64,000 nt of DNA from Camelus ferus (GCF_009834535.1 NC_045699.1:75206001-75270000); one strand, 5' to 3'; counted from the stretch's first letter, positions 11,138 through 52,950 are shown. Notes: generated by a model not told the origin, from the letters alone. Numbers and translations: made by a program.

Positions 11138-14100
11138 TCAGCTGCTGTCCCACTTCCAGAGGTGGAGAACATGATCATAAAAGGAGCAAGTGGCTAGAAG
11201 GTTGATGTCAAAGTTTGCTGCCTCCAAGTACAGGTCACAGTCACAGATCTGGAGCCTTGAGGCATGCAGCCGGCTGCCACAAGGAGCCTTCAGCCTGCCT
11301 CCACCCTGGAGCTTGGTACCACCCTCTCCATCGTCCACTAAAGGATCAGAAGAGGATGCTGGCGACTGGCCCTTAACCTTCAGGTTACAGACCACGTCTG
11401 CAGTTTTGGCTCCTGGGTCACTGCAGGGAAAGGACCCTAGGGGGAATAACGGCTGGGCCTGCGGCAGACGGTGGAAGTAGAGCCAGGACCAGTCGACTCC
11501 GTACACCAGTGCGTTGGGCAGGATGTGGGACAGGGCGACTGTGCAGGCTTCCTGCTTCTCCTCTGGAGCAAACCGGGCGGACACGGGAAACAGAGCATTA
11601 CCCAGAGTGGACCTCGTCACCCCGACCGACAGCCCCGCCCACCCTCCAAGCGAGACTCTGCCAAGAGCAGCCCCTGTGCAGCCCGCGGAGGAGCGTGGGG
11701 ATGCGCACAGAGGACAAAAGTCCTCATCTTGCAGGGAGCGTGCTGTGCCCACGAGGGGAGCTAGCCCGGCAACAGAACACGCATGCAGGGCACCTTCCCA
11801 GTCAGAGGACCTGCGAAAGCTTCCCATTAAGACTTAAAGCCAGGGACGAAGGACTCAGCACAGTGGGGGAAGAGCCGTGCAGGTGGCCATGGCCGAGGTG
11901 TCAGGGACCGGGGCTCGTCTGGAGGCCACGTCACATACAGTCCAGTGTGCTCTGTAAAAGAGTCTGGATTTAGCTTTTGCTTGGAAAGGAGTCACGGAGG
12001 ACCTGAAGCAAGAGCAATTTCCGAGGTGCCGTGGCAACTGCGAAGCTGGACAGAACAGAGCTGAGGGAGGGCTGAAAGTGACCCACGAGCAGAAGAAAGA
12101 AATGATGAGCTGTCGCCAGGCCTGAGGTGGTCAAGGGTCTGGGGTGAGGACCAGGCTGGCATGAGCAGCCATGGAAAATGGGTGGCCAGTGAGCCAGGGA
12201 TGTGGACTTAGGAAACTGTCAGCAGCGGGAAGCCCCAACAGCCCACCATTCAGCCTTCGAAGAGTCAGCCTGGAGGCTGCAACACCCTGAAGGTGGCCAC
12301 TGCTGCCTCCTGAGTGCCGGGATCCATGCCAAGTGATCTGAATCGCGATCGATCAGAATGAGCACTGATGAGGAAAGGCTGGAGCTGGACTCGGCAAACA
12401 TGAGACCCTCCTCCCTCACCCAGGGCTTTCCCCGGGCAGAGGGCTCTGGCAGGGAGCTGGGCGCTGAGGCTCCCAGAGGGCAGAGAGACACACTGGCCAC
12501 ATGCATGGAAGGAAGGCCCAGGAGATGCCCCGCTCGGGTGGGGACGCCTGGCCCTGGTAACTAGTGGACGACAGGTCTTCCTGCTGCACAGAGACATGAC
12601 ACCTGTGACACAGCACGGCTGCCCCTCGGGGGCACGCGGAGCCCAAACAGAACAACACGTTACGTTAGGCAGCAAGGGGTGGAAAGTTCCAAAGAGTAGG
12701 AATGGTGCAGGCCACATTCCGACCTAACGCAGTGAAACAAAATGAATGACACGGTCAAAACAAAAGACTGCTTCCACCTAGAAGTCTAAAAACCTTCTAC
12801 TAAAGCCACTCATGGATAAAAGGGAAATACGAACTCAAATCACAGAACTTCTTTATAAAAAGTGCAAGTGAAATGACTACAGTCATAACCTACAAGTATG
12901 CTTACATCACAGAAAAGTTCAAACATAAAAACACGTAACATAAACAGATTAATAAAGATGAGTGAACTGTACTCCCAACTCAGAATGCTAGAATGAGAAC
13001 TAAGGAGGCACAGGGAGAGGAACAATACAGACAAAAAGAGACACTGATGAGAGCAGAGAACAGAACACACCATACAACCAAAATCAAAATCCTTTCAAAG
13101 AAATAATATACACACTACTAACTAACCTAATTAAGGAAAAAGAAATACTTATTTCAATGTTTGCATAAATATATAAAGTAAAACATGACAAAGGGCAAAA
13201 TAGCCATTAGAGGGAATTTTTTTTTTAAACTAACCTGAGTGTGGGAGGGAAAAGGCTTTTTAACTAAAACACAAAATCTAGATTGAATTTTAAAAATCTA
13301 TAAATTGTATTACATTTAAGAAAACCTTCTGCATGGGGAAAAACACCACCAAAGGCAGATCAAGGCAACAGAGGAAACATTTCCAGCCTAAACCAGAGGT
13401 CAAGGGTCAAGGCCACTGCACAGAACTCCAAGCCGAGAGAGAAAAGGACCAGAAGCCAGAGGGGAAACAGGCAAAGGACAGACAGAGGCACTTCACAGAG
13501 ACAGATATAACAGCAGCCCTCAGCAAGTGAGAGTATGTTTAACCTCACTCCTAGTTAGAGACACGCAGGTTTAAGTTCCTGTGAGACGCCACTTCACAAG
13601 CCTGATGGCGCTGCTGGCGAGGCTGAGGGGAGGCAGGCTTCCCCATGTGTGGCTGGTGAGGAAACAGTGAGATCCGTGCTCACCTGGGACCCTGTAGCCC
13701 CTCATCTAGGCAGCAGCCCTGAGGATACCTTCAGTGAGGCAGAAGCATGCGCACAACAGAATACACGTCAAGCACTATTTACAGTGGCAAACTACTGGAA
13801 GAGCCCAAACATGCACCTAGAAAGTTGGAAGAGAGATCTGTAGTATACGCACCAAATGGTGTGCTATGTAACCTTTAAAAAGAGCGAGGCCAACAGGCAC
13901 GTGGAAAGATGCTCAATGTCGCTAATCATCAGAGAAATGCAAGTCAGAGCCACAGTGAAGTATCACCTCACACCAGCCAGAATGGCCATCTTTAAAAAGT
14001 GCACAAACGATAAGTGCTGGAGAGGCCGTGGAGGAAAGGGAATTACCTCCTGCACTGCTGGTGGGAATGCAGTTTGGTGCAGCCACTGTGGAAAACAGTA

Positions 14101-17100
14101 TGGAGATTCCTCAAAAGATTAGGAATAGACTTACCATATGACCCAGCAATCCCATTCCTGGGCATATATCCAGAAGGAACCCTACTTCAAAAAGACACCT
14201 GCACCCCAGTGTTCACAGCNNNNNNNNNNNNNNNNNNNNNNNNNNNNNNNNNNNNNNNNNNNNNNNNNNNNNNNNNNNNNNNNNNNNNNNNNNNNNNNNN
14301 NNNNNNNNNNNNNNNNNNNNNNNNNNNNNNNNNNNNNNNNNNNNNNNNNNNNNNNNNNNNNNNNNNNNNNNNNNNNNNNNNCATTCTAAGTGAAGTAAGC
14401 CAGAAAGAGAAAGAAAAATACCATATGAGATCGCTCACATGTGGAATCTAAAAAACAAACAAACAAACAAGCATAAGTACAGAACAGAAACAGACTCAAA
14501 GACATAGAATACAGACTTGTGGTTGCCAAGGGGGTGGGGGGTGGGAAGAGATAGACTGGGATTTCAAAATTGTAGAATAGATAAACAAGATTATACTGTA
14601 TAGCACAGGGAAATATACACAAGCTCTTATGGTGGCTCACAGAGGAAAAATGTGACAATGAATATGTATATGCTCACGTACAACTGAAAAATTGTGCTCT
14701 ACACTGGAATTTGACAAAACATTGTAAAATGATTATAAATCAATAAAAAATGTTAAAAAAAAAAACAAACTTACAGTTACTGAGGGGAAAGAAGGTGGGA
14801 AGGGATACATGGGAGTCCGAGATTTGCAAATACTAACTACTATACATAAAACAGGTAGATTTGTTCTGTACAGCACACGGAACCATACTCAGTACCTTAT
14901 AGTAACCCACGCTCACACATGCACATGCACACTCCCACACAGCACCCCGCGGCTATGAGCACGGCTACGAGCACAACTAATGACCAGATCTCAGGCTGTA
15001 AACAACACTGGCACTAAGAGGCCGCAGGACTTCCAGAGGAACAGCTGACCCCGGGTGCAGGGGAGGCAAAGTACGAGATGAACCTGGAGCTAACTGTGCC
15101 CCAAAGCAAGGAGGGGCAGTTGGCCGTCCTTCCCCTGAGTTCCACACCCACAGAGTCAACCAACTCAGGATCAAAAATACCACACGACCCAAGGCTGGAG
15201 GAAGCTACAGGCTTGGAACCCCAGGCCACAGGGCCACCTGGACTCAAAAATCTCTGAGGACATATGAAAAGGACATTCATGCTGTGTTAGGTATTACAAA
15301 CAACTGAGAGATGATTTAAAGTGTCCAGGTAAATGCAAACACTGGGCCATTTTATCTGAGGGACCTGGTGTCTGCAGGGGCCCTGGAACCCACCCCCGTG
15401 GATACCAGGGAACAACTGTATATGGATACAGATAGACACATGGAAGAAAGGACAGCTCTTCCTTACAAAAGAATACGAATTTTAAAATGTGGGAAGGATA
15501 GTAACAGAAAATCACCATTCTGCAATTACAGTAGTAACTTATCAGGCAAGAATCATCAATGGATTGAGTGAAAGTCTGATGAGAAACACAGGTTCAAAGA
15601 CTCATCACAGGCTATTAATTACAAAGGAAAAATAGCTTTTTTACACTGGAGAAAGCTAGGGCAACCACTTTGACCACATGGTCCAGTTAACATCTGCCAC
15701 AAAGGACAGAGTGGCGTCACGTGACTCCTGACCCAACACACTGAGGAGAGAATGTCACCTCTGTCAGGTCCTGGTGGAAGAGGGTCCGGCCCAGGACAGG
15801 AGACAATTTCAGACTCAGACCATGAACAGACGGAAGCAGGCAGCACCCGTGAGGGACCCTGAGTGGCTCCCCAGCGTCAGAGGAGAGGCTTTACAGCAAA
15901 CAAAACCTTATTATAGGTAAACAGGGCACCGTGCATCAACAAGAGGGTCCATACGTGAGGAAAACACAGTTATGAACAAGGACACCCCTAACAAGAACCC
16001 CAAAACCTCTGAGACAAAACCTGACAGAACTGAGGAGGAGCCAACAGTGACAGCTGAGACTTCAGCCCCATGCTGTCAGTGACGAACAACCAGGCGGACA
16101 GTCAGCAAGGAAGCAGCAGCCCTGACCGCCCCCACAGGCCCTCCGCCTGTGTCAGCAGCGCAGGCCCCTCGGAGGGGCAAGCGGGGCTCTCCCCGGCGGC
16201 CGCACGCTCGGCACGCCTCAACAAGCCCGGAGGAGCCCACAGTGGCGTCAAGTCAGAAATCCTAGCAGAAAGAAATCGAGGGCGCCCACGAGAATGTGGA
16301 AATTAAACCACACACTCGTGAATAGCCACTCAGTCAAAGAAGGTATCACAAAACGCCGACGCTGACGGAGAGGAACGACCTCAGACTGTGACAGTGCGAG
16401 CCGCCAGGGCAGGGAGGAGCGTGGGTTCAGAGGAGGACGCTGGTGCAGAGCCAGTGCAGAGGAGCCCGGCCCCAGGAGCCACAATGGGGCTGAGGCGCTA
16501 AGTCGCTTCTTTGCATGGAGGAGGGGACGGGAGGTCACGGGCTGAGAGTGAGGGGAGGACAGGGGTGGGGGCTGAGAAAAGAAACGGAAATAGTTTGGAC
16601 AGCAAAAGAATGACAGGTCAGGTTCACCTGGAGATTCCAAGCACCCACAGGAGCATGAGGTGAAGGGAAGGGAGACCATGCAGGGGCTGCGTCCCCCCAG
16701 CCGCACGCTGTGGCTCGGCCTCAGGCAGAGCTTTCCCAGTGCCAGGTTCTCCTGGAGCATCAGACCACAGGGACCACACTGACCACAGCAGGACGATGTG
16801 GCAAAGGTGGGTCAAGGATGGTTATGAAAGCGACAAGCGGTAATGCGTCTGGAGGAGGGGTCCCAATAGGGCCAGAAAGTCGCTGAGATGCAGAAGGTAC
16901 CATGACAATCCAGACGGTCAGGTAAGAGCCATGCGCAGAGGGCAGGGTGACAAACCTCGGCAAGGCCTCGGGCGTGGCCCTGGGAACATGCGAAGAGGCA
17001 AGAACTGGGGCCCCCGCTCACCTACTGCCCTTTGGCAGTTGAGGACCTTAAAGCCTCCGTGCACACAGGCCGCCAGCAGCAGGTGGCGGCGGAAAGGGTG

Positions 17101-20100
17101 CCACTTGAGCCTCCACACCCCGCCCTGCACGGGCGTGTCCGCGAGCGGCTGCTTCATGTTCCGAGTGTCCCAGAGCAGGACGTGCTCGTCGTAGCTGGAA
17201 CCGGGGCCACAGAGAGCACATGGGAGCGCGGGGCCCAGGGCACCCACCTGCTTACCCTCCCAGACAGACCCAGGGCCCACCGCCCCTTCAGGGCCAGCCC
17301 ATGAGACATGGCCACCGCCACGACACGGAGAGGCCACGGCTGGTGCAGGAAGGCATGGGAACAGACGCTGGGTCTCACCTTCCTGTGGCCAAGACGTTCT
17401 CCTGGTGTGGGCTGCTCTGGATGCTGCACACGCCCATGGAGTGTCTGTGAGCGGAGGGCAGGGACTGAGCTGGTGCCCTGGCAGGCCCCTGGGACCCTGA
17501 GGCACGGGCAGCGCCGGCCCCCCACCACCTACCTTCTGCTTGTGAACACGGATGTGGGGGGCGTCCTGGTGTCCCAGCCTTTCAGGAGGCCATCGTCCCC
17601 ACCTGCACAGAACAGAAATGCCCAACAACGGCCGGCGCGTCTCAGGCGGCATTCTCACCCACGAGGAGGTTCCTGGGGACCATCCTCCCGGGGGGTTGCA
17701 GGCAGGCACCAGGCAGAAGAGCCAAAGCAGCACCTGGGAATGGTCACCCTGGCCGTAACCTGAAGAAGGCGTGTGTGGGGAAGAGGGAAGGACCAAGGCT
17801 GCCCCAGGAGGAGAAAGGGCAGGCCAGGAAGTCCAGGGGAGAATTTCCAGGTCACACGTGACTCAACCCTTCGGGGTCCTGACCACCAGGAACCTGCACC
17901 CACGTCAAGGGACTCTGAACAGGACCTGCACAAGGGAGGCATCAAATGTGGAGACCTGAGGTTCTGGAGCCTGCAGCGCCGCTCCACGTGGTTGTGACCT
18001 GACAGAAGAGGCCCTGTGCTTGTCCTGGGGGAACTGAGAGGAAAGGGAGAGCAAGGGGGCGGCACGCCGACCCACAGCCGGCCTTGGGAGAAAGGCAACA
18101 GCAAGCACAGGGCCGCGCTGCCTTGAAGGAGGGAGGGAAGGGACGGCTGGAGAACAGGTCGCGCAGGGAGGACAAACAGGAGCAGAAAGCCCTCGGAGGC
18201 CTGAGCCCTCCGTTCCCCGACCATCTACACCCACCGTCCACCCATCTGCCCCCCACAAACCTGTCCTTCCATCCATCCTCCAGCCACCACCCGTCCAACC
18301 ACCCACCCACCTACAGGTAGTTACTGAGCGAAGTACAGACCCTGGGACAAAGAATACGGGTGGACCCACGCCCAAGTGGACGGGCAGAAGCAGGCCATCT
18401 GGGCAAGGCGCCTGCGGGTGGGCCTCAAGCACAGCTGCCTTCTGTGGCGAGTGCGTAAGGAGAGCTGCCTGTGGCGTCTTTACACCATGGTCTGTCCTTC
18501 TCTCTCACATCACACTCGCCTCACCAGGACGCCTATCCGACTGCCTTCACACCGAGCAGCCTCACCACTTCTCACCTCCGTTGCTCCCAGCGTGCACCCG
18601 CGGGGGTGACAGGCCTCCAGGCGACACCACAGCCCTTGCAGTCTGCACTCAACACACTCCTCAGATTTTAAAACACAGCCCAGAAGAGATCACTCCTCTG
18701 TTCAACATCCGCAACGGCTCCCTCCACGCTGAGCTGAAGCCACAGTCCCTCCCGGGGCTGGCGAGGCCGTGCCCCCGCGGCTTCTGCTCTCACCTTCCAG
18801 TCCAGCACCGCCTGTGCCACCCGGCCACGCTGGCTACGCGCTGTTCCGAACACACCGGGCTCACTCCTGCCTTGGGGCCCTTCGCCTATGGCGACTGTGC
18901 TCTGTCACACAACCTGCACCTGCCCGCACGCCTGAGCCCCTCAGCCCGTCCCACCTTTCTTCTCCCCAGAGGACGTACACCTGCCGCGCACACTGTGCTT
19001 CCTGTTCGCTGCCGTCTCCTGCCAGATGGTGTGAGCACAATGAAAGCAGGGACTTTTGTCAGCCTGCTCACGGGTGTGTCCCAAGCCCCCAAGACAGTGC
19101 CTGGCAGGCAGCAGGTGCTCAGTAAACACCTGCTGAATGAACAGCCTGGTCCTGCGTTATAACATCATTGTCCTGTACCTCTGCTCTGAATCAGCTTAGC
19201 CTTCGGGTAGGGAAACTGGTTCAGAAATGAGAGCTCAAACAATTAAATCTTCACTGTTCTCCCCGAGGCTGCTCAAGGGTGTGACAAGTAACCCAGAAAG
19301 GACCCTCCTTCAGGGGAGAACAAGCATTAAACACATAATCAGAATTAGGATGAGCACAGGATGTCAAGAGAGCGATTCCAGCATCTCTAAAAACGAGACT
19401 GTAAGCTGAGCCCCGCCAGACATGTAGAATTAACGCCTAAAGGAGACATCACGTGACCAAGCACCAAGATTGCTGAGAACATGGAATATTTGAAGAAAAG
19501 AAGTCAGAGGCATGGAAGGAGGGTTCGAAATTGGACCAGAAAGGCAGGCACAGGACCACAGGTCTCACACCAAGTGTTCTGGCAGGAGCTGCAAAGAGCA
19601 ATATGGTACACGAGGTGGGCGGAGGCTGCAGGTCTTCACAAGAGTGGAGGCTGGACTGGAAAAGGGGGAGAATGAACACAGGGCTATCACTCAGGGCTCA
19701 GCCCCAACAAACGGGAGGAGACTGAGTCCGGACAAGTGGAGAGAGAGAGAGATGGCCAATTCTGAGATGCTCCTGTGGTAAAACCAGCAACACACACTCA
19801 GGGGAGGGGTGAGCGGACAGCGGGAGGGGCAGGTATGCACAAGGCAGCATAGGAGCGCATGGCCCAGCCCGTGATCCTGGGCGAGTGCCTGCGAAGCACC
19901 CCTGCAGGCAGGATAAATGCATCAAGAATGCAGGAAAAAGGTCTGGCTAAAAACCACAGCACAGTGTTTCTGGAAGAGACATTAACGGAGGTCAGGAAAA
20001 CAACGACATGGAGCAAGAGGAGGGTCCAGAGGACAGTGAACACTTCCATGCTGTGGGAAAGGGGCCCCCCAGGTAATGGGAAGGCTGGAAAAAGGACAGT

Positions 20101-23100
20101 CCAGGCAGCGTGGTGTGACGACCAGGGAAAAGTGTGGGGGCGCAGGGGCCCGGTGTGTGAGTGCTGCCGTGCGACCGGGTGTGTAGCTGTCGCTGTCACT
20201 CAGCAAGAGGTTCCGCTGTGGCGGGGCGAGGTCACACAGCCTCCTGACCAGCCGGCAGAACACCCCGGCTTCACGTGGTGTTCTGAGCACACTCAGAACT
20301 CAGCTCACGTGGGGCTGAGCACACTCCCAGCAACTGAGAGAGGGAGACGGGTCAGATCTTTCCTTTGCCTCTCTGCAAACTCTCCGGCTCCTCTTCCGCC
20401 TTCTCGCTGAGGCCAGTGCCCTCCCTGCCCGTGAGCTACCCAGAGCCCCCCGTCCCCAAGCTCTGTTCACCTCTCATTCCCACCCCAGCAACCCCCAAAT
20501 ACATACCACTACCAATACCAGGAAATTAACCCTACTTCATGCTTCCTTTTCTTTGGGACAGTGAAATACTCCAAAGAGGAAACAAACCTGAAACCCAACA
20601 TGAAAATTCAACTCTGGACCCAGAAGCACCAGCAGGGAGGGGCTCCGACTGGACTGTGAGAGTGAGTGAGGCCCCCTCCGCCACAGCAGCACAGCAGGGC
20701 CTCACCAGAGCTGCTCCAGCACGGGGTGGCACCATCCGGGCCTGCAGGGCCTGCACAGATTGCACCTCGCCCTCTAGGTGAGCCCCAGCCACGGCCTCTG
20801 CCCTGGAAAATACCCTCTCCGCAAGAGGGTTTCGTGATCCTAGCAGGACCAGAATCAAGTAGCCTTCTCTGCTCCCCATCCCTGCGCCCTCAACCAGACT
20901 TGAGAGAGAACCGAAGCGGAGGGGGTACCAACCTGAATACACAACCTCTGTCTGCCAGTAATTGAAAGCAGCAATCCAGGCCTCAAAGTGATGGGCCTGC
21001 CACGTGGCCACAGCCTGCAGCCCCGGCCCTGCCTCGCTCACCTTCAGGAGGGACAGCTGCCCGTTGGAGTCGCTGCTAATGAGTTTCAAGGGCTGGTCAC
21101 TGGCTCTGGACACAGGGAACCAATGGAGAAACCTGGCTGAAGTTCAAGCACAGACTCAAACGCATCACTCTCTTCTGGCTCCCAACTGGTGACACTTTAT
21201 GCCCCCACAGCATGTCACACAGAGGCTTTCCACAGACCTGGAGTGTGGACATGCCTCTTAAGAAGCGTGCTTGAGGGGGGAGTGAATAGGTCAGTGGTAG
21301 AGCATATGCCTAGCATGCATGAGGTCCTTGGTTCAATCCCCAGTACCTCCATCAAAATAAATAAGTAAACAAACAAATTACCTCCCCCAAAAGTAAAAAA
21401 ATTAAATAAATAAATAAGTATCAGCTCCTCCCGATAAAAACACCACCCCTTCTAACTAAAAGGCCGAACTTTTTTCTTTTTCCATCAGGCCTGGCAGTGA
21501 TGTTCCCAGGTTTGGGGAGCCACAGATGAGGCCAGCACAGGTGGCTTTCGTTCTCTTGCGTGAAGATAGGAGTGGATGCCCAGGGGAAGACTCGGGCCCA
21601 CCAATGCCAGCCCTTACCTTCCAGCCTTCCCAGTGGACCAGTCCAAGGACAAGGCCAGACCCCGCTTTTCCAGGGCAAAGCGGGAGAATGGCTCTAGCAT
21701 GTAAGAGTTCTGCTGTGGAGAAAGGAACGTGATCAAAGGGGCACGGCCTCAGACCCAGAGAGGATTTCTCCTCTGGTCCAGGAATGCTGCCGTCCCCTTG
21801 TTTCTACAAAGGGCCTGGCCCTTGTCACCGACCTCGGATCGCACCAAGCGGAGGAGCTCTACGGACCCGCCAGCATCCGCCACGCCCAAGAGGGCGTGGC
21901 CGCCCACTGGGACGTGGCACCTGCGAAGACACACGTGCCAGTTAGAACCCGGGGCGTGCCCAGAGCACTGGAGAGCACCATGCACCCCAGTAACTATTTA
22001 AATTTCAGCTTCAAAACTGGGTGTGAGCCTACAATTCTGTTTCAACAAGATTCCCCAGCTTATGAAGCAGAAAACTAGCATTGCTTCCCAGACTGACAGA
22101 GATGTGGAAAAACCCGTCTACAGCATCCTCCAGGTGCCAACAGGTGGGCAGGACAGGACGGTAAAGAAATGAACCCAAGCCTCAGACACTCCCCCGCCCT
22201 GTGGAACGCTGCCAGGCATCAGGCTCCTCACAACAAATTCCAGACAAGCAGGACTGTTCCCAAAGTCGTACCATTTCATGTCCAGGATTGCAGACGTATC
22301 TCTCCTTTGGATCTCAACCAGGGGGCAAGTGGAACCATCCTCATTGAAACTATACAGGTAGAGGCGGCCTAAACGGACTTGAGGCTCATCAACATCCAGT
22401 CCACTCTGCAAAAAAGCTCAAGTGAGTCCTCTAATCACCTTCACAGATTCTGAGGAGCCCAGGGATGGGGACTGAAAGAAAGAAGAGACTGGCCAAGACT
22501 CTGGAACTGTGCCTGGAGGCAGCACCCCGACTTCCTGAGCTGGAGAAATGTCTCTTGTATGCAAGTAATGGGTAGGGGCTGAGCCCTCCTCTACTCAGCA
22601 CAGGAGACTCCTTATAAATCGGCCTCCTTCTATATCGGCCAAGAGCAGGGTTAGGGTCAGCACAGGGCTCAGTCTGCCTGGGACAGCCCTGGCTTAGGGC
22701 TGTTGCCCCAGCACCAGTTCTCACGCTTTAAAGTGTCTGGTTTGGATGCACATAGATGCCTTCAAGAGAGTGGGTACAGCTACTGCGAATCCCATTTTCT
22801 CTTTACTCTAGACTTCATCCGTAAACTTGAACCACGCCTGCAGAGATGACATCCTGCTTTCGGGATGCCCTGTTTCTAACCTACTTTCTGGCCACAAGGC
22901 CAATGTCGCATCTGCACCCCCTGTGCGACTCCACGCCAGTTTTCTCTTTCGACCGAGGCTTGCGGTCGGCTCTGCCTCTTGGGAGCCCTTTCTCGCTCTT
23001 CTCCAGAGAAGAGCCCGACCCTGGGGCTCTAGCTGCTTGGGAAATGCCACCTGGGGATCGAAGGCCTGTGGAGACCGCGCGAGGCCGGAGGGCACCGCGC

Positions 23101-23246
23101 ACCTTGCCCCCCGGGTCGGCGGGCTGGTCCTCCGGCTTCCGCAGCTGGTAGGTGCCGCACGCCAGCAGGCGCCTGCAGCCCTCCAGCGGGCACCACTCCA
23201 CCGAGTCCGCAGTGTGCTCCGCGTCCACCGCCTGCAGCAGCCGCAC
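11138..23246 (-). CDS. DPH7: Diphthine methyltransferase/methylesterase DPH7 (WDR85), WD40 protein, 9 coding exons: 23103-23246(start unresolved), 22272-22405, 21833-21920, 21618-21709, 20933-21105, 17533-17602, 17379-17444, 17022-17194, 11138-11562
   Basis: Spliced reading [20 protein letters not shown]...ACGTYQL...RLGRLYLY...AILDMKWCH...[14 protein letters not shown]...YSGGDDG...GVCSIQSSP...[21 protein letters not shown]...[10 protein letters not shown]...VYGVDWSW...[16 protein letters not shown]. All junctions are GT/AG and in phase; 454 aa counted from the GTG at 23246. No in-frame ATG in exon 1 (see findings). Confidence 0.93.
12780..13885 (+). mobile_element. Old, degraded L1 fragments
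   Basis: A-rich decayed ORF2-like sequence (aatctagattgaattttaaaaatctataaattgtattacatttaagaaaaccttctgca; gtttaacctcactcctagttagagac; gcactatttacagtggcaaactactggaagagccca). Confidence 0.6.
13888..14765 (+). mobile_element. Younger 5'-truncated L1 (ORF2 C-terminus, 3'UTR, poly-A), antisense to DPH7
   Basis: Translates [42 protein letters not shown]...[15 protein letters not shown]; has a frameshift; ends aataaaaaatgttaaaaaaaaaa. Confidence 0.9.
14220..14381. other. Assembly gap (162 N) inside the L1
   Basis: Run of N. Confidence 1.
14766..14910 (+). mobile_element. Second L1 3'UTR fragment in tandem
   Basis: caaacttacagttactgaggggaaag...ctgtacagcacacggaaccatactcagtaccttatagtaacc resembles artiodactyl L1 3' ends. 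Confidence 0.6.
15275..15421 (-). mobile_element. MER2-like TcMar-Tigger fragment
   Basis: Reverse strand tacagttgttccctggtatccacgggggtgggttccaggg...tttaaatcatctc...taatacctaac resembles the MER2 terminus. Confidence 0.6.
18450..19143 (+). mobile_element. L2 3' fragment
   Basis: Classic L2 end: acagtgcctggcaggcagcaggtgctcagtaaacacctgctgaatgaa. Confidence 0.7.
21275..21417 (+). mobile_element. tRNA-Ala(AGC)-derived SINE (camelid vic-1-like), antisense in DPH7 intron 4
   Basis: A-box-like taggtcagtggtagag, anticodon arm gcctagcatgc, B-box ggttcaatccc, and an A-rich tail with ttacctccccc. Confidence 0.85.
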
Positions 23247-23660
23247 CCGACTGCCGGCCGCCCAGCATTCGGAGAAGGACGCGGCGGCGACCGGGGTGGC
23301 GGAGAGTGGGTGGCGGAGGCGGGCGGATGAAGCCAGGTTGAGAGCAGGGTCGGCGGGCCCGGAGCTGCGGCGAGAGCGGGGCCAGGGCCGGGATGGTGGG
23401 GGGCACTGCTCAGCTCGGGCGCGACACTCCTCCCACTTCCGCCGCCGTCCCCTCTCCGCGACTCCTTCCGGAGCGCCAAGGCAGGACTTCCGGCCTCCGT
23501 AGACGCCCCGCGCGAGGGAGGCCGGGCTCCCGCGCCCCCTGCCGGCCGGCGGACCTCAGCTGGCCCTACGTGCTCCCCTCGCGCTTAGCAGCCGCCCAGA
23601 CGCGGGCTTGGGAGACGCGCGCCGCGTGTCCTGCACGGATTCTCGGGACAGCTGAGCTGA
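23050..23660 (-). promoter_or_regulatory. DPH7 CpG island promoter
   Basis: CpG-dense; ETS CGGAAG motifs at ~23435-23441, ~23465-23471 and ~23486-23492 on the minus strand. Confidence 0.75.
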
Positions 23661-24052
23661 TAGAGGAAAGCAGGGCATGGGAATGGGGCGGGTAAAGGGC
23701 CTGGACACCCAGGGAGCCGAGTTCAGGGTCTGACGCAAAGGGACTGAGCCTGGTCTGCCCTCCCTGACCCTCTGGAGGGCCTGAGTGCGGTGCGTCGCGG
23801 GGCGCAGACCTGCCGGCTGGACAGCACAGAAAGCAGACAGGGCTGGCCGGAGGGCACTGGCAGGGGTGGAGGGCGGGAAGGTGAACAGAGGGCACGGAGA
23901 ACCAGGGTCTGGGCAGAGGGGCAGGCTCTGCCTGCCAGTTAGACTTAGGATGCAAGGGAGACCAGCAGTCATGATCTGATTTGGGAGACCGAGTACGTGT
24001 TGACACCGTTCAATAAAATCAGTTGACTCTACAGTATGTTGAGGAACGCAAG

Positions 24053-51779: not shown

Positions 51780-52950
51780 CGGAATCGATGTGTGTCCGGG
51801 GTTAGAGGTCAGGGGTCCTTCCCCACCAGGCCAGCCCGCCAGAATGCCTACGCAGAGTGAGAGGCTATCGCGCAAATGGGAGGACCACCGGAGGACGACG
51901 TGCGGCGCCGCGACGACTCCAGAAGGCCGCTACTCCCGGCCCCGCCCCCGCGGCCCGCCGTGGAGCTCCGGTTCCGGCCGGCGCAGGCCCGCGCCGCGGA
52001 CGCCGCTCACTGGCCACAGCGCGCAGGCGCGGGCTCGGGCGCAGGCGCAGACGCGCGCGACCGGCCCNNNNNNNNNNNNNNNNNNNNNNNNNNNNNNNNN
52101 NNNNNNNNNNNNNNNNNNNNNNNNNNNNNNNNNNNNNNNNNNNNNNNNNNNNNNNNNNNNNNNNNNNNNNNNNNNNNNNNNNNNNNNNNNNNNNNNNNNN
52201 NNNNNNNNNNNNNNNNNNNNNNNNNNNGCGGCGGGCCTGCGGGCCGGGCGCGCGGGCGGAGGCGCGGGGCGCGGGGCGCGGGCGAGGGGCGGGCGGGCCG
52301 GCGCCTCCCCGCCACCCCCGCGCCTCAGGCCGAGGCCGGGCCGAGGCGGCCGGGCGTCCGGGCCGCGCTGCGCGGGGCGCGCTTTGTGCGGGCGGGCGGA
52401 GGGGAGAGCGAGGGCGAGACGCGGCGGGCGCGGAGGGCCGCCGCCCGCGCCCCTGCCCGCGCCCCGAGCCCCCGGGGGGGCGGCCTGGAGCCCCGCGGAA
52501 GGGGCGGAGGACAAAAGGGAAAGTGGGGCGAGCCGGCCAACTTGGCGGCGCGAGTCGAGGCGAGGCTGTGCGCTCCCGGCGCCGCTCCTGCGCCCGCTGA
52601 CCTTTCACTTTGTTCCGAATAGGATGGCTCCGTCTTTCAGGAAAAGTTGGCCGGGCCGGCGCGCCGCTCCCGGACAATGCGGCCGGCCTGGTGGCTGTCA
52701 GGCGCAGGAGGGCACGACTTCTGCTCGTTTTAGGCGAGCGCTCAGCCGGGGCTCCGGATGTGAAAGTTCCCGTCCCTTTGTTGATGTCCCCGGCCTCCCC
52801 TTTACTCGTTCTCAGGAATAGTTTCCCCGGCTCGCAGCGGCAGGGGGATCAAACTCTCGTGAGGTGGACCACTGGCTTCCTGCAGCCCGGAGAGCAGGCG
52901 GGCGGCGGCGTGCCCGTGGAGACGCGGGGATAGTGCGCTCGCGGGGCTGG
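51780..52950 (+). promoter_or_regulatory. CpG island, inferred EHMT1 promoter / exon 1 region
   Basis: Extremely CpG-dense; NRF1-like GCGCAGGCGC at 52021-52030 and 52039-52048; position matches the mammalian order ARRDC1-EHMT1. Confidence 0.7.
52068..52227. other. Assembly gap (160 N), probably hiding EHMT1 exon 1
   Basis: Run of N in the centre of the island. Confidence 0.95.

What the first reader, a model, noticed from the sequence alone, without database searches (positions are those of the whole stretch)
23103..23270. DPH7 exon 1 has no in-frame AUG start codon
Seen: the DPH7 frame is open from a TGA at 23556-23558 down to the exon-1 donor and contains no ATG. It reads ...GAA TGC TGG GCG GCC GGC AGT CGG GTG CGG CTG CTG CAG ([13 protein letters not shown]). 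The only ATG (23266-23268) is 22 nt before the GTG, so it is out of frame by one base. The first in-frame Met after splicing is in LDMKW at the end of exon 2, which would delete the conserved TADSVEW/ACGTYQL strands. Inference: either the ancestral ATG became GCG at 23259-23261 (I recall an MAGS-type N-terminus in rodents, unverified, which would align codon for codon), or there is a 1-nt indel, real or an assembly error. All nine exons are otherwise intact and diphthamide synthesis is a conserved pathway, so an unusual start is more likely than gene loss.
Basis: partly seen in the sequence, partly recalled or inferred. Interest (0 to 1): 0.72.

Follow-up and report, generated by a model that had tools for sequence, protein, structure and literature searches.

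The report
Camel DPH7 likely starts at CUG
The camel gene for the diphthamide-pathway enzyme DPH7 really has no usable AUG start codon. It most likely begins at a CUG codon conserved across most hoofed mammals, carnivores, bats, pangolins and moles, a point that current gene annotations miss.

Summary
**Observation: confirmed.** On the minus strand the DPH7 frame is open from TGA 23558-23556 to the exon-1 donor (23103) and contains no ATG. The only ATG (23268-23266) is out of frame.

- This is not an assembly error. Contigs from four DNA runs and four RNA runs match the window with no indel. RNA shows the exon 1-exon 2 splice and no upstream exon.
- The gene is intact and expressed. It has nine GT-AG exons, and the last 365 residues are identical to Camelus ferus RefSeq DPH7.

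**Explanation.** The proximal AUG (human W-M-M-G; here W-A-A-G, GCG 23261-23259) is missing in most Laurasiatheria, not only in camelids.

- An in-frame codon 75 nt upstream (23336-23334, aacCUGg) keeps A at -3 and G at +4 in 10 species aligned; the mole has G at -3.
- That codon is CTG in nine of the 11 species, GTG in a ruminant-like contig and ATG in Pteropus. Afrotherian and armadillo models have Met at or next to this column.
- The distance from this site to the conserved domain varies from 54 to 102 nt and is always a multiple of 3.
- It is the only in-frame near-cognate codon upstream of the first conserved β-strand.

**Verdict.** Probable obligate CUG initiation, a new member of a known kind, with no direct evidence of translation. 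RefSeq's 365-aa camelid models start inside the propeller and are probably truncated.

The parts
23334..23336 (-). Candidate translation start: in-frame CUG in the context ctcaacCUGgc (A at -3, G at +4, C at +5)
   Evidence: it is the only in-frame near-cognate codon between the bounding TGA (23558) and GTG 23246; the site is xTG in 11 species: CTG in 9, GTG in 1, ATG in Pteropus. G at +4 is kept in all 11; -3 is A in the 10 aligned species and G in Talpa; all four RNA contigs extend at least 47 nt upstream of it.
23262..23336 (-). 25-codon N-terminal extension (L-A-S-S-A-R-L-R-H-P-...-S-E-C-W) lying between the CUG and the position of the lost proximal AUG
   Evidence: length differs between species (site to Gln anchor 102, 99, 87, 84 or 54 nt) but is always a multiple of 3. 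Alignment gaps here are 3, 6 or 15 nt, whereas upstream gaps are mostly not multiples of 3. There are no in-frame stops; predicted disordered (pLDDT below 50 for residues 1-27); fast-evolving at the amino-acid level.
23259..23261 (-). GCG (Ala) codon at the position of the ancestral proximal AUG
   Evidence: camel W-A-A-G-S aligns with chimp/human-type W-M-M-G-C. Armadillo, Rousettus, elephant, pika and mouse carry a Met at or next to this position.
23266..23268 (-). The only AUG in exon 1. It is out of frame and in a weak context (ctccgaAUGc). It opens a 60-codon ORF ending at TGA 22391-22389 in exon 2.
   Evidence: the same ATG is present only in camelids and hippo (GAA/GGA + TGC codons) and absent in the other species aligned, so it is not a conserved ORF.
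23556..23558 (-). In-frame TGA that bounds the open frame upstream
   Evidence: stop at -222 relative to the CUG.
23103..23521 (-). Exon 1 as transcribed. The 5' ends of the RNA contigs lie at 23383-23521 and the donor follows 23103.
   Evidence: depth is 100-300 against 5-20 in intron 1. The 23103->22405 joint (CT..AC on the plus strand, i.e. GT..AG) is present in 4 of 4 RNA runs. There are no upstream joints or loose ends.
22272..22405 (-). Exon 2. It contains the first in-frame AUG (22279-22277), which RefSeq uses as the start of its 365-aa camelid models.
   Evidence: The RNA joint is reported at 22270/21918, equivalent to 22272/21920 because 2 nt fit both sides.
11138..21920 (-). Exons 3-9 of DPH7 (21920-21833, 21712-21618, 21105-20933, 17602-17533, 17444-17379, 17194-17022, 11562-11138, including stop TGA 11140-11138)
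   Evidence: all introns are GT-AG. The spliced ORF from CTG 23336 is 485 codons with no internal stop. The last 365 residues are identical to Camelus ferus XP_032334934.1 (P0250).

Best explanation
The window carries an intact, expressed Camelus DPH7 gene (diphthamide pathway WD40 propeller). It has lost both AUG start codons that other placental mammals use.

Scanning ribosomes most likely initiate at the in-frame CUG at 23336-23334 (A at -3, G at +4). That gives a 485-residue protein. Its first roughly 27 residues form a disordered, fast-evolving leader, and the conserved propeller begins at about residue 30.

Ribosomes that scan past the CUG would mostly be captured by the weak out-of-frame AUG at 23268, a 60-codon dead-end ORF. 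Output is therefore probably modest and sensitive to start-codon stringency.

The arrangement is not camelid-specific. The CUG (GUG in a ruminant-like contig) is shared across Laurasiatheria. It sits at or beside the start AUG of Pteropus and of armadillo and afrotherian models, so an ancestral AUG was probably replaced by a near-cognate codon.

**Shown:** absence of an AUG in DNA and RNA, the splicing, the intact ORF, conservation of the site and of the reading frame, and purifying selection on the 120 codons upstream of Met121, the RefSeq start.
**Inferred:** that the CUG is the codon actually used.
For: 1. **No usable AUG.** Searches show none in frame. Identical DNA in 4 runs and RNA in 4 runs, with no upstream exon, confirm it.
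2. **Only candidate.** The CUG is the only in-frame near-cognate codon upstream of codon 31. The conserved fold starts at residue 29-31: the AF2 model has a strand at 30-38 with pLDDT above 90, and Foldseek aligns human DPH7 residue 4 and yeast residue 6 to residues 30-31.
3. **Site conservation**. CTG in Camelus, Vicugna, hippo, a pig-like contig, Lynx, Canis, Smutsia, Hipposideros and Talpa; GTG in a ruminant-like contig; ATG in Pteropus. G at +4 is kept in all. The -3 base is A in the 10 aligned species and G in Talpa.
4. **Frame conservation.** Distances from the site to the Gln anchor are 102, 102, 102, 102, 99, 99, 99, 87, 84, 84 and 54 nt, all multiples of 3. Alignment gaps downstream of the site are 3, 6 or 15 nt. 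Upstream gaps include 13, 7, 20, 4, 26, 2, 16, 1 and 10 nt.
5. **Bounded ORFs.** In Lynx and the ruminant-like contig an in-frame stop lies 105 and 81 nt upstream of the site. Neither has an in-frame ATG from that stop to the exon-1 donor.
6. **Protein alignment A3**. The site column holds L in 10 Laurasiatherian models, V in Rousettus, and M in Pteropus, Rhynchocyon and Dasypus.
7. **Purifying selection.** Camelus against Vicugna gives dN/dS 0.36 overall. The 120 codons that RefSeq omits have 3 synonymous and 0 non-synonymous changes. Nineteen columns invariant across 29 vertebrate DPH7 sequences lie N-terminal of Met121.
Against: - There is no direct evidence of initiation: no ribosome profiling, N-terminal peptide or mutagenesis.
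- The extension shows only a weak coding signature at the amino-acid level. Minimum changes per codon position are 23/16/26, against 7/7/15 in the core.
- Indels that are multiples of 3 may be favoured by GCC-type triplet repeats whether or not the region is coding.
- The upstream context matches only 3 of 6 bases of the GCCGCC 'NAT1' enhancer described in PMC13754004.
- No unusual hairpin follows the CUG (z = -0.31).
- An out-of-frame AUG 68 nt downstream would drain ribosomes that scan past the CUG.
- The RNA evidence consists of unstranded assembled contigs. These cannot exclude rare alternative first exons in other tissues.
Confidence: 0.7

Rival explanations
1. Translation starts at one or more downstream in-frame near-cognate codons after leaky scanning: GUG 23246, CUG 23240 or 23237, or GUG 23228. 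The protein would lack the extension and begin at or inside the first β-strand.
For:: GUG 23228 has a good context (gcgGUGg); the Manis javanica RefSeq model starts M-R-L-L-Q at the codon equivalent to 23246, so a protein starting at codon 31 is thought viable.
Against: - These codons lie downstream of both the well-placed CUG and the out-of-frame AUG.
- GUG 23246 and the two CUGs have pyrimidine at -3 and C at +4.
- A start at 23228 removes most of strand 30-38.
- This reading does not explain the invariant Kozak positions at the upstream site or the frame preservation there.
Confidence: 0.12
2. The protein starts at AUG 22279-22277 in exon 2, as in the current RefSeq camelid models (365 aa).
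For:: RefSeq models for C. ferus, C. bactrianus, C. dromedarius and V. pacos start there. It is the first in-frame AUG.
Against: - This start would delete strands 30-38, 42-48, 57-66, 88-98 and 107-116 of the propeller, along with 19 invariant columns.
- The omitted 120 codons show 3 synonymous and 0 non-synonymous changes between camel and alpaca.
- Ribosomes would have to pass five out-of-frame AUGs first.
Confidence: 0.05
3. DPH7 is no longer productively translated in camelids. The gene is decaying, or only its transcript remains.
For: There is no AUG, and an out-of-frame AUG traps ribosomes that scan past the CUG. dN/dS for the region after Met121 is a moderate 0.47.
Against: - The 485-codon ORF is intact and has canonical splice sites.
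- The spliced mRNA is abundant.
- Overall dN/dS is 0.36, with no non-synonymous change in the N-terminal 120 codons.
- The same AUG-less architecture is retained, with intact genes, in at least six Laurasiatherian orders.
Confidence: 0.05
4. An alternative upstream exon or promoter, not seen in these samples, supplies an in-frame AUG.
For: Old RefSeq and GenBank models (529-579 aa in camel, 540-694 aa in dog, cat, hippo, whale and bats) invoke upstream starts. Only four RNA runs were examined.
Against: - One search shows no joint into exon 1 and no loose ends at its 5' side in 4 runs.
- The in-frame TGA at 23558 blocks any contiguous extension.
- The upstream starts in different species' models are not homologous to each other.
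Confidence: 0.05
5. A sequencing or assembly error, or a private 1-nt indel, has shifted ATG 23268 out of frame.
For: Removing one G from the GGG at 23263-23261 would put the ATG in frame.
Against: -: four DNA contigs from four samples are identical.
- four RNA contigs show no indel.
- alpaca and hippo have the same spacing, and most other species lack this ATG altogether yet keep the same frame.
Confidence: 0.01

Closest known systems
EIF4G2 (DAP5/NAT1), translated only from a GUG codon
   Same: The main ORF has no AUG start. It has a conserved near-cognate codon with purine at -3 and G at +4. EIF4G2 is cited as the classic case in PMC9789052 and PMC13754004.
   Different: EIF4G2's site carries the GCCGCC 'NAT1' upstream enhancer and is conserved across vertebrates. 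The DPH7 site matches only 3 of 6 of those bases. It is non-AUG only in Laurasiatheria; other placentals use an AUG there or 25 codons downstream.
NELFB (CUG), TRPV6 (ACG), STIM2 (UUG), TEAD1 (AUU): proteins made from a single non-AUG start
   Same: The whole functional protein depends on near-cognate initiation upstream of the first AUG (PMC4444357 abstract; PMC9789052 introduction).
   Different: Those cases have experimental proof and apply to human and mouse. For DPH7 the evidence is comparative only, and human and mouse DPH7 use an AUG.
Conserved non-AUG N-terminal extensions found by phylogenetics (Ivanov et al. 2011, PMC3105428; Fedorova et al. 2022, PMC9789052)
   Same: The same kind of inference is used: an in-frame open region upstream, a conserved near-cognate codon and a preserved reading frame.
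   Different: In those sets the extension is an additional proteoform alongside an AUG-initiated one. Here no AUG-initiated full-length form is possible. DPH7 and WDR85 are not mentioned in the main text of either paper; supplements were not searched.

Membership tests
DPH7 / WDR85 (diphthamide-pathway WD40 protein, named 'diphthine methyltransferase' in the databases) | Orthology by sequence and gene structure | tested here: met
   all nine exons align to chimp DPH7 and to the camelid models; the last 365 aa are identical to C. ferus XP_032334934.1; relatives are named diphthine methyltransferase.
DPH7 / WDR85 (diphthamide-pathway WD40 protein, named 'diphthine methyltransferase' in the databases) | WD40 β-propeller fold matching known DPH7 proteins from yeast to human | tested here: met
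   AF2 model with pTM 0.76; the propeller core outside the disordered segments (1-27, 79-82, 377-460) mostly exceeds pLDDT 90; the top Foldseek hits are Q9BTV6 (human), Q9CYU6 (mouse), Q55C80 and O74865, with P38332 (yeast DPH7) at rank 10, all labelled DPH7. Pfam WD40 and propeller families.
DPH7 / WDR85 (diphthamide-pathway WD40 protein, named 'diphthine methyltransferase' in the databases) | Enzymatic role in diphthamide synthesis on eEF2 | not testable with these tools
   Needs a biochemical or knock-out assay.
Main ORFs with obligate non-AUG initiation | No in-frame AUG that could yield the complete conserved domain | tested here: met
   The first in-frame AUG is codon 121, inside the propeller.
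Main ORFs with obligate non-AUG initiation | Near-cognate codon in a strong Kozak context, conserved across species | tested here: met
   xTG with G at +4 in 11 of 11 species; -3 is A in 10 and G in Talpa; x is C, G or A only.
Main ORFs with obligate non-AUG initiation | Coding-type conservation between the near-cognate codon and the known coding sequence | tested here: inconclusive
   The frame is strictly preserved, with no stops. The codon-position pattern is only weakly coding-like, and the camel-alpaca extension has no differences to score.
Main ORFs with obligate non-AUG initiation | Direct evidence of initiation at the codon (initiation-site profiling, N-terminal peptide, mutagenesis) | not testable with these tools
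   No ribosome-profiling or proteomic data could be examined.
NAT1-motif non-AUG sites (GCCGCC(A/G)NNXXXG, PMC13754004) | GCCGCC at -9 to -4, plus purine at -3 and G at +4 | tested here: not met
   Camel -9 to -4 is GCTCTC, which matches 3 of 6 (motif definition). A at -3, G at +4 and a non-G base at +5 are present.

The most novel reading that the evidence does not exclude
Across Laurasiatheria (at least six orders) the housekeeping enzyme DPH7 is made only from a conserved non-AUG codon: CUG in most, GUG in ruminants. This codon replaced an ancestral placental AUG. A second, proximal AUG was lost as well, so start codons have turned over repeatedly in one essential-pathway gene. Diphthamide synthesis in these animals would then depend on start-codon stringency factors (eIF1, eIF5, 5MP). 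Dozens of RefSeq and Ensembl DPH7 models would need correcting.
Probability: 0.6. Interest if true: 0.65.

Novelty: new member of a known kind. Interest (0 to 1): 0.55.

Why it matters
- **A new case with a readable history.** DPH7 would join the short list of proteins made solely from a non-AUG start. The history can be read across species: AUG in armadillo, some afrotherians and Pteropus; CUG or GUG in most Laurasiatheria; a different, proximal AUG in primates, rodents and elephants.
- **Annotation.** Pipelines disagree widely on this gene, and this explains why. Camelid models are 365 aa, models for dog, cat, hippo, whales and bats are 540-694 aa, and some Ensembl models have no Met. It also gives a concrete correction: a 485-aa product in camel.
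- **Physiology.** It suggests that DPH7 dosage in livestock and companion animals is set by near-cognate initiation efficiency. This can be tested with existing Ribo-seq and proteomics data from cow, pig and dog.

Tried and rejected
- **Assembly error or 1-nt indel.** Rejected by identical DNA and RNA contigs and by alpaca.
- **Hidden upstream exon.** No joints or loose ends were found.
- **RNA hairpin after the CUG as an enhancer.** The fold is no better than shuffled sequence (z = -0.31).
- **NAT1-type GCC enhancer.** Only 3 of 6 bases match.
- **Conserved alternative ORF from AUG 23268, or a frameshift from it.** That AUG is absent outside camelids and hippo.
- **Codon-position test on the extension.** Only weakly informative.
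- **Camel-alpaca dN/dS on the extension alone.** There are no differences to score.
- **Look-ups that failed.** Kogia isoform X7 and Canis aureus isoform X4 are not on record. Hippo and Canis lupus were used instead.
- **Literature.** No paper holds both 'DPH7' and 'non-AUG'. The three papers holding DPH7, CUG and initiation are unrelated by their titles and abstracts.
- **Earlier scan findings.** The search by words returned nothing.

Full report
**1.

Read on the minus strand, the DPH7 frame has a TGA at 23558-23556. It then stays open through ...[29 protein letters not shown]... to the last base of exon 1 (23103, followed by gt), with no ATG in frame.

The only ATG in 23600-23000 on that strand is 23268-23266, in another frame. 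After splicing it gives a 60-codon ORF that stops at TGA 22391-22389. The first in-frame ATG is 22279-22277, the M of L-D-M-K-W, near the end of exon 2.

**2. It is neither an assembly artefact nor a missing exon.**

Contigs from four DNA runs are identical to the window over 22900-23700, with no mismatch or gap. The runs are filed under four samples, four studies and two organism labels. One may be the assembly's own source, but the others are independent.

In four RNA runs:
- Exon 1 is covered at depth 100-300, against 5-20 in intron 1.
- The contigs run from 23103 up to 23383, 23441, 23468 or 23521.
- All four carry the 23103->22405 joint, which is GT..AG on the minus strand.
- Exon 2 continues into exon 3.
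- There is no indel in exon 1, and no joint or loose end on its 5' side.
- One 5'-leader SNP (23363 A>G) appears in three runs.

These are assembled, unstranded contigs, so rare isoforms cannot be excluded.

**3. The gene is intact and belongs to Camelus.**

Splicing nine exons, all GT-AG, from CTG 23336 to TGA 11140-11138 gives an uninterrupted 485-codon ORF. The exons are 23336-23103, 22405-22272, 21920-21833, 21712-21618, 21105-20933, 17602-17533, 17444-17379, 17194-17022 and 11562-11138. The last 365 residues are identical to Camelus ferus XP_032334934.1.

Against alpaca (L001), dN/dS is 0.36 for the whole ORF. In the 120 codons upstream of Met121 there are 3 synonymous and 0 non-synonymous differences.

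An AlphaFold2 model built on a 29-sequence alignment has pTM 0.76. It shows a WD40 propeller whose first strand is residues 30-38, while residues 1-27 are disordered. Foldseek's best matches are human, mouse, Dictyostelium and fission-yeast DPH7, with budding-yeast DPH7 at rank 10. Human residue 4 aligns to residue 31 and yeast residue 6 to residue 30.

**4. How databases treat it.**

Current RefSeq models for C. ferus, C. bactrianus, C. dromedarius and Vicugna pacos are 365 (or 364) aa and start at Met121. Older or GenBank models are 529-579 aa with invented upstream starts.

A Met121 start would delete five β-strands and part of a sixth. It would also delete 19 columns that are invariant across 29 vertebrate DPH7 sequences.

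**5. The lack of the proximal AUG is ancient, not camelid-specific.**

I searched 1.84 billion representative proteins with exon 1, then searched for homologues with a Pteropus model. Two groups emerged.
- The proximal Met is present in primates (W-M-M-G-C), rodents (M-A-G-S), pika, elephant, aardvark and armadillo.
- It is absent in Kogia, Monodon, hippo, a pig-like and a ruminant-like contig, donkey, dog, fur seal, ferret, badger, lynx, pangolin, Hipposideros, Miniopterus, Eptesicus and mole.

For the second group, RefSeq models run to 540-694 aa with unrelated far-upstream starts, and Ensembl-derived models begin without Met.

**6. A conserved upstream near-cognate start.**

The AUG-less species share an in-frame block, (A/F)-N-L-A-S-(S/P)-x-R-L-R-R-P..., about 40 codons before T-A-D-S-V-E-W. 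In the camel the Leu is CTG 23336-23334, in the context ctcaacCUGgc. It is the only in-frame near-cognate codon (CUG, GUG, ACG, UUG, AUU, AUC or AUA) between the bounding TGA and codon 31.

I fetched genomic DNA for alpaca, hippo, lynx, Hipposideros, Smutsia, Canis lupus, Pteropus, a pig-like and a ruminant-like metagenome contig, and Talpa.

| Feature | Result |
|---|---|
| Codon at the site | CTG in 9 species, GTG in the ruminant-like contig, ATG in Pteropus (where RefSeq starts the protein, M-A-S-T-S-R-L-R-R-P) |
| Base at -3 | A in the 10 aligned species, G in Talpa |
| Base at +4 | G in all 11 |
| Distance from site to the Gln codon of L-L-Q-A-V-D | 102, 102, 102, 102, 99, 99, 99, 87, 84, 84 and 54 nt, all multiples of 3 |
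| Alignment gaps, site to Gln codon | 3, 6 or 15 nt |
| Alignment gaps in the 120 columns upstream | include 13, 7, 20, 4, 26, 2, 16, 1 and 10 nt |
| Distance from a conserved GGAAGT promoter motif to the site | takes all residues mod 3 |

In Lynx and the ruminant-like contig an in-frame stop lies only 105 and 81 nt upstream of the site. Neither has an in-frame ATG from that stop to the exon-1 donor.

In protein alignment A3 the site column holds L in ten Laurasiatherian models and V in Rousettus. It holds M in Pteropus, Rhynchocyon and armadillo. Elephantulus and Chrysochloris start within one to three columns of it. The simplest history is an ancestral placental AUG at this site that became CUG in the Laurasiatherian stem, with a second, proximal AUG gained or lost in various lineages.

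**7. Mechanism proposed.**

Scanning 43S complexes would meet the following codons in order on a leader of about 50-185 nt that contains no AUG:
- the CUG in a good Kozak context;
- 68 nt further on, an out-of-frame AUG in a weak context (pyrimidine at -3, C at +4);
- poorly placed in-frame GUG and CUG codons (23246, 23240, 23237);
- a well-placed GUG (23228) that already lies inside strand 1.

Only the CUG yields the complete conserved fold. The extension it adds is predicted to be disordered and evolves fast. It probably serves mainly to carry the start codon.

Initiation efficiency is probably modest. The site lacks the GCCGCC 'NAT1' enhancer of PMC13754004, matching 3 of 6 bases. No exceptional downstream hairpin is predicted. 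The out-of-frame AUG exists only in camelids and hippo and arises from GAA/GGA + TGC codons, so it is a by-product and not a conserved ORF.

**8. What is shown and what is inferred.**

Shown:
- there is no AUG, in DNA or in RNA;
- the mRNA is correctly spliced and the ORF is intact;
- the N-terminal 120 codons are under purifying selection;
- the xTG site, its Kozak positions and the reading frame downstream of it are conserved.

Inferred: that ribosomes actually start at the CUG. I had no ribosome-profiling or peptide data.

Caveats:
- Indels that are multiples of 3 may be favoured in GCC-rich repeats.
- The species labels 'pig-like' and 'ruminant-like' are my guesses from sequence similarity of metagenome contigs.
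- The Rousettus Val, and the Leu residues seen only in protein models, cannot be assigned to specific codons.

**9. Comparison with what is known.**

The class is well established. It includes EIF4G2 (GUG), TRPV6 (ACG), STIM2 (UUG) and TEAD1 (AUU), listed in PMC9789052, and NELFB (CUG), PMC4444357. DPH7 (WDR85) appears in none of the main texts I searched, and no paper in the library holds both 'DPH7' and 'non-AUG'.

I therefore rate it a new member of a known kind. Its unusual feature is that the non-AUG state is lineage-wide in Laurasiatheria, while other placentals use one of two AUGs.

My enumeration and cross-species tests agree with it.

**10. Verdict.**

- The indel or assembly-error alternative is refuted, and camelid specificity is wrong.
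- Best explanation: obligate CUG initiation at 23336-23334, confidence about 0.7.
- Interest: 0.55.

Noticed in passing
window 22277-22279 (RefSeq start); proteins P0250, P0251, P0258, P0259, P0261, P0249: Annotation of camelid DPH7 is inconsistent. Current RefSeq models are 365 aa, starting inside the propeller. An older C. dromedarius model is 579 aa, and GenBank models are 529-538 aa whose upstream starts do not match an ATG in this window.
   Followed up: yes
proteins P0156-P0172, P0180 (whale, dog, hippo, fur seal, ferret, lynx, bats, mole, badger): RefSeq DPH7 models in many Laurasiatheria are 540-694 aa, against about 452-485 expected. Their mutually unrelated N-terminal extensions are apparently forced by the absence of a nearby AUG. 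Ensembl-derived donkey, narwhal and lion models begin without Met.
   Followed up: partly
window 23363: A>G on the plus strand, in the 5' leader upstream of the CUG, appears in 3 of 4 RNA runs. Alpaca and other camel protein models carry the G allele (Pro instead of Ser in the upstream frame). It looks like a polymorphism of the assembled individual.
   Followed up: partly
window 22272 / 21921-21950: In RNA run X19, a contig joins the end of exon 2 to sequence that matches, by eye, the reverse complement of the last ~30 nt of intron 2 before exon 3. Run X17 shows an odd 'goes back 173' joint at 22272->22100. This may be an alternative acceptor, intron retention or an assembly-graph artefact.
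   Followed up: no
window 22338-22395: Exon 2 carries four out-of-frame ATGs (22395, 22389, 22344, 22338) ahead of the in-frame ATG 22279. This makes reinitiation or leaky scanning to Met121 even less likely.
   Followed up: partly
window 14220-14381 and 52068-52227: Two runs of N (162 and 160 bases). The first lies in DPH7 intron 8.
   Followed up: no
L001:16027-16434 (-) and L010:1-329 (+): Gene neighbours seen in relatives: an MRP-L27-family (Pfam PF09809) gene downstream of alpaca DPH7, and a zf-MYND gene upstream of mole DPH7. I did not check whether the window shares this synteny.
   Followed up: no
L002 (hippo), 90 nt upstream of the CTG site: Hippo has an in-frame ATG 30 codons upstream of the conserved CTG, with no stop between them. 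Whether it lies within the transcript is unknown. No other species aligned has it.
   Followed up: no
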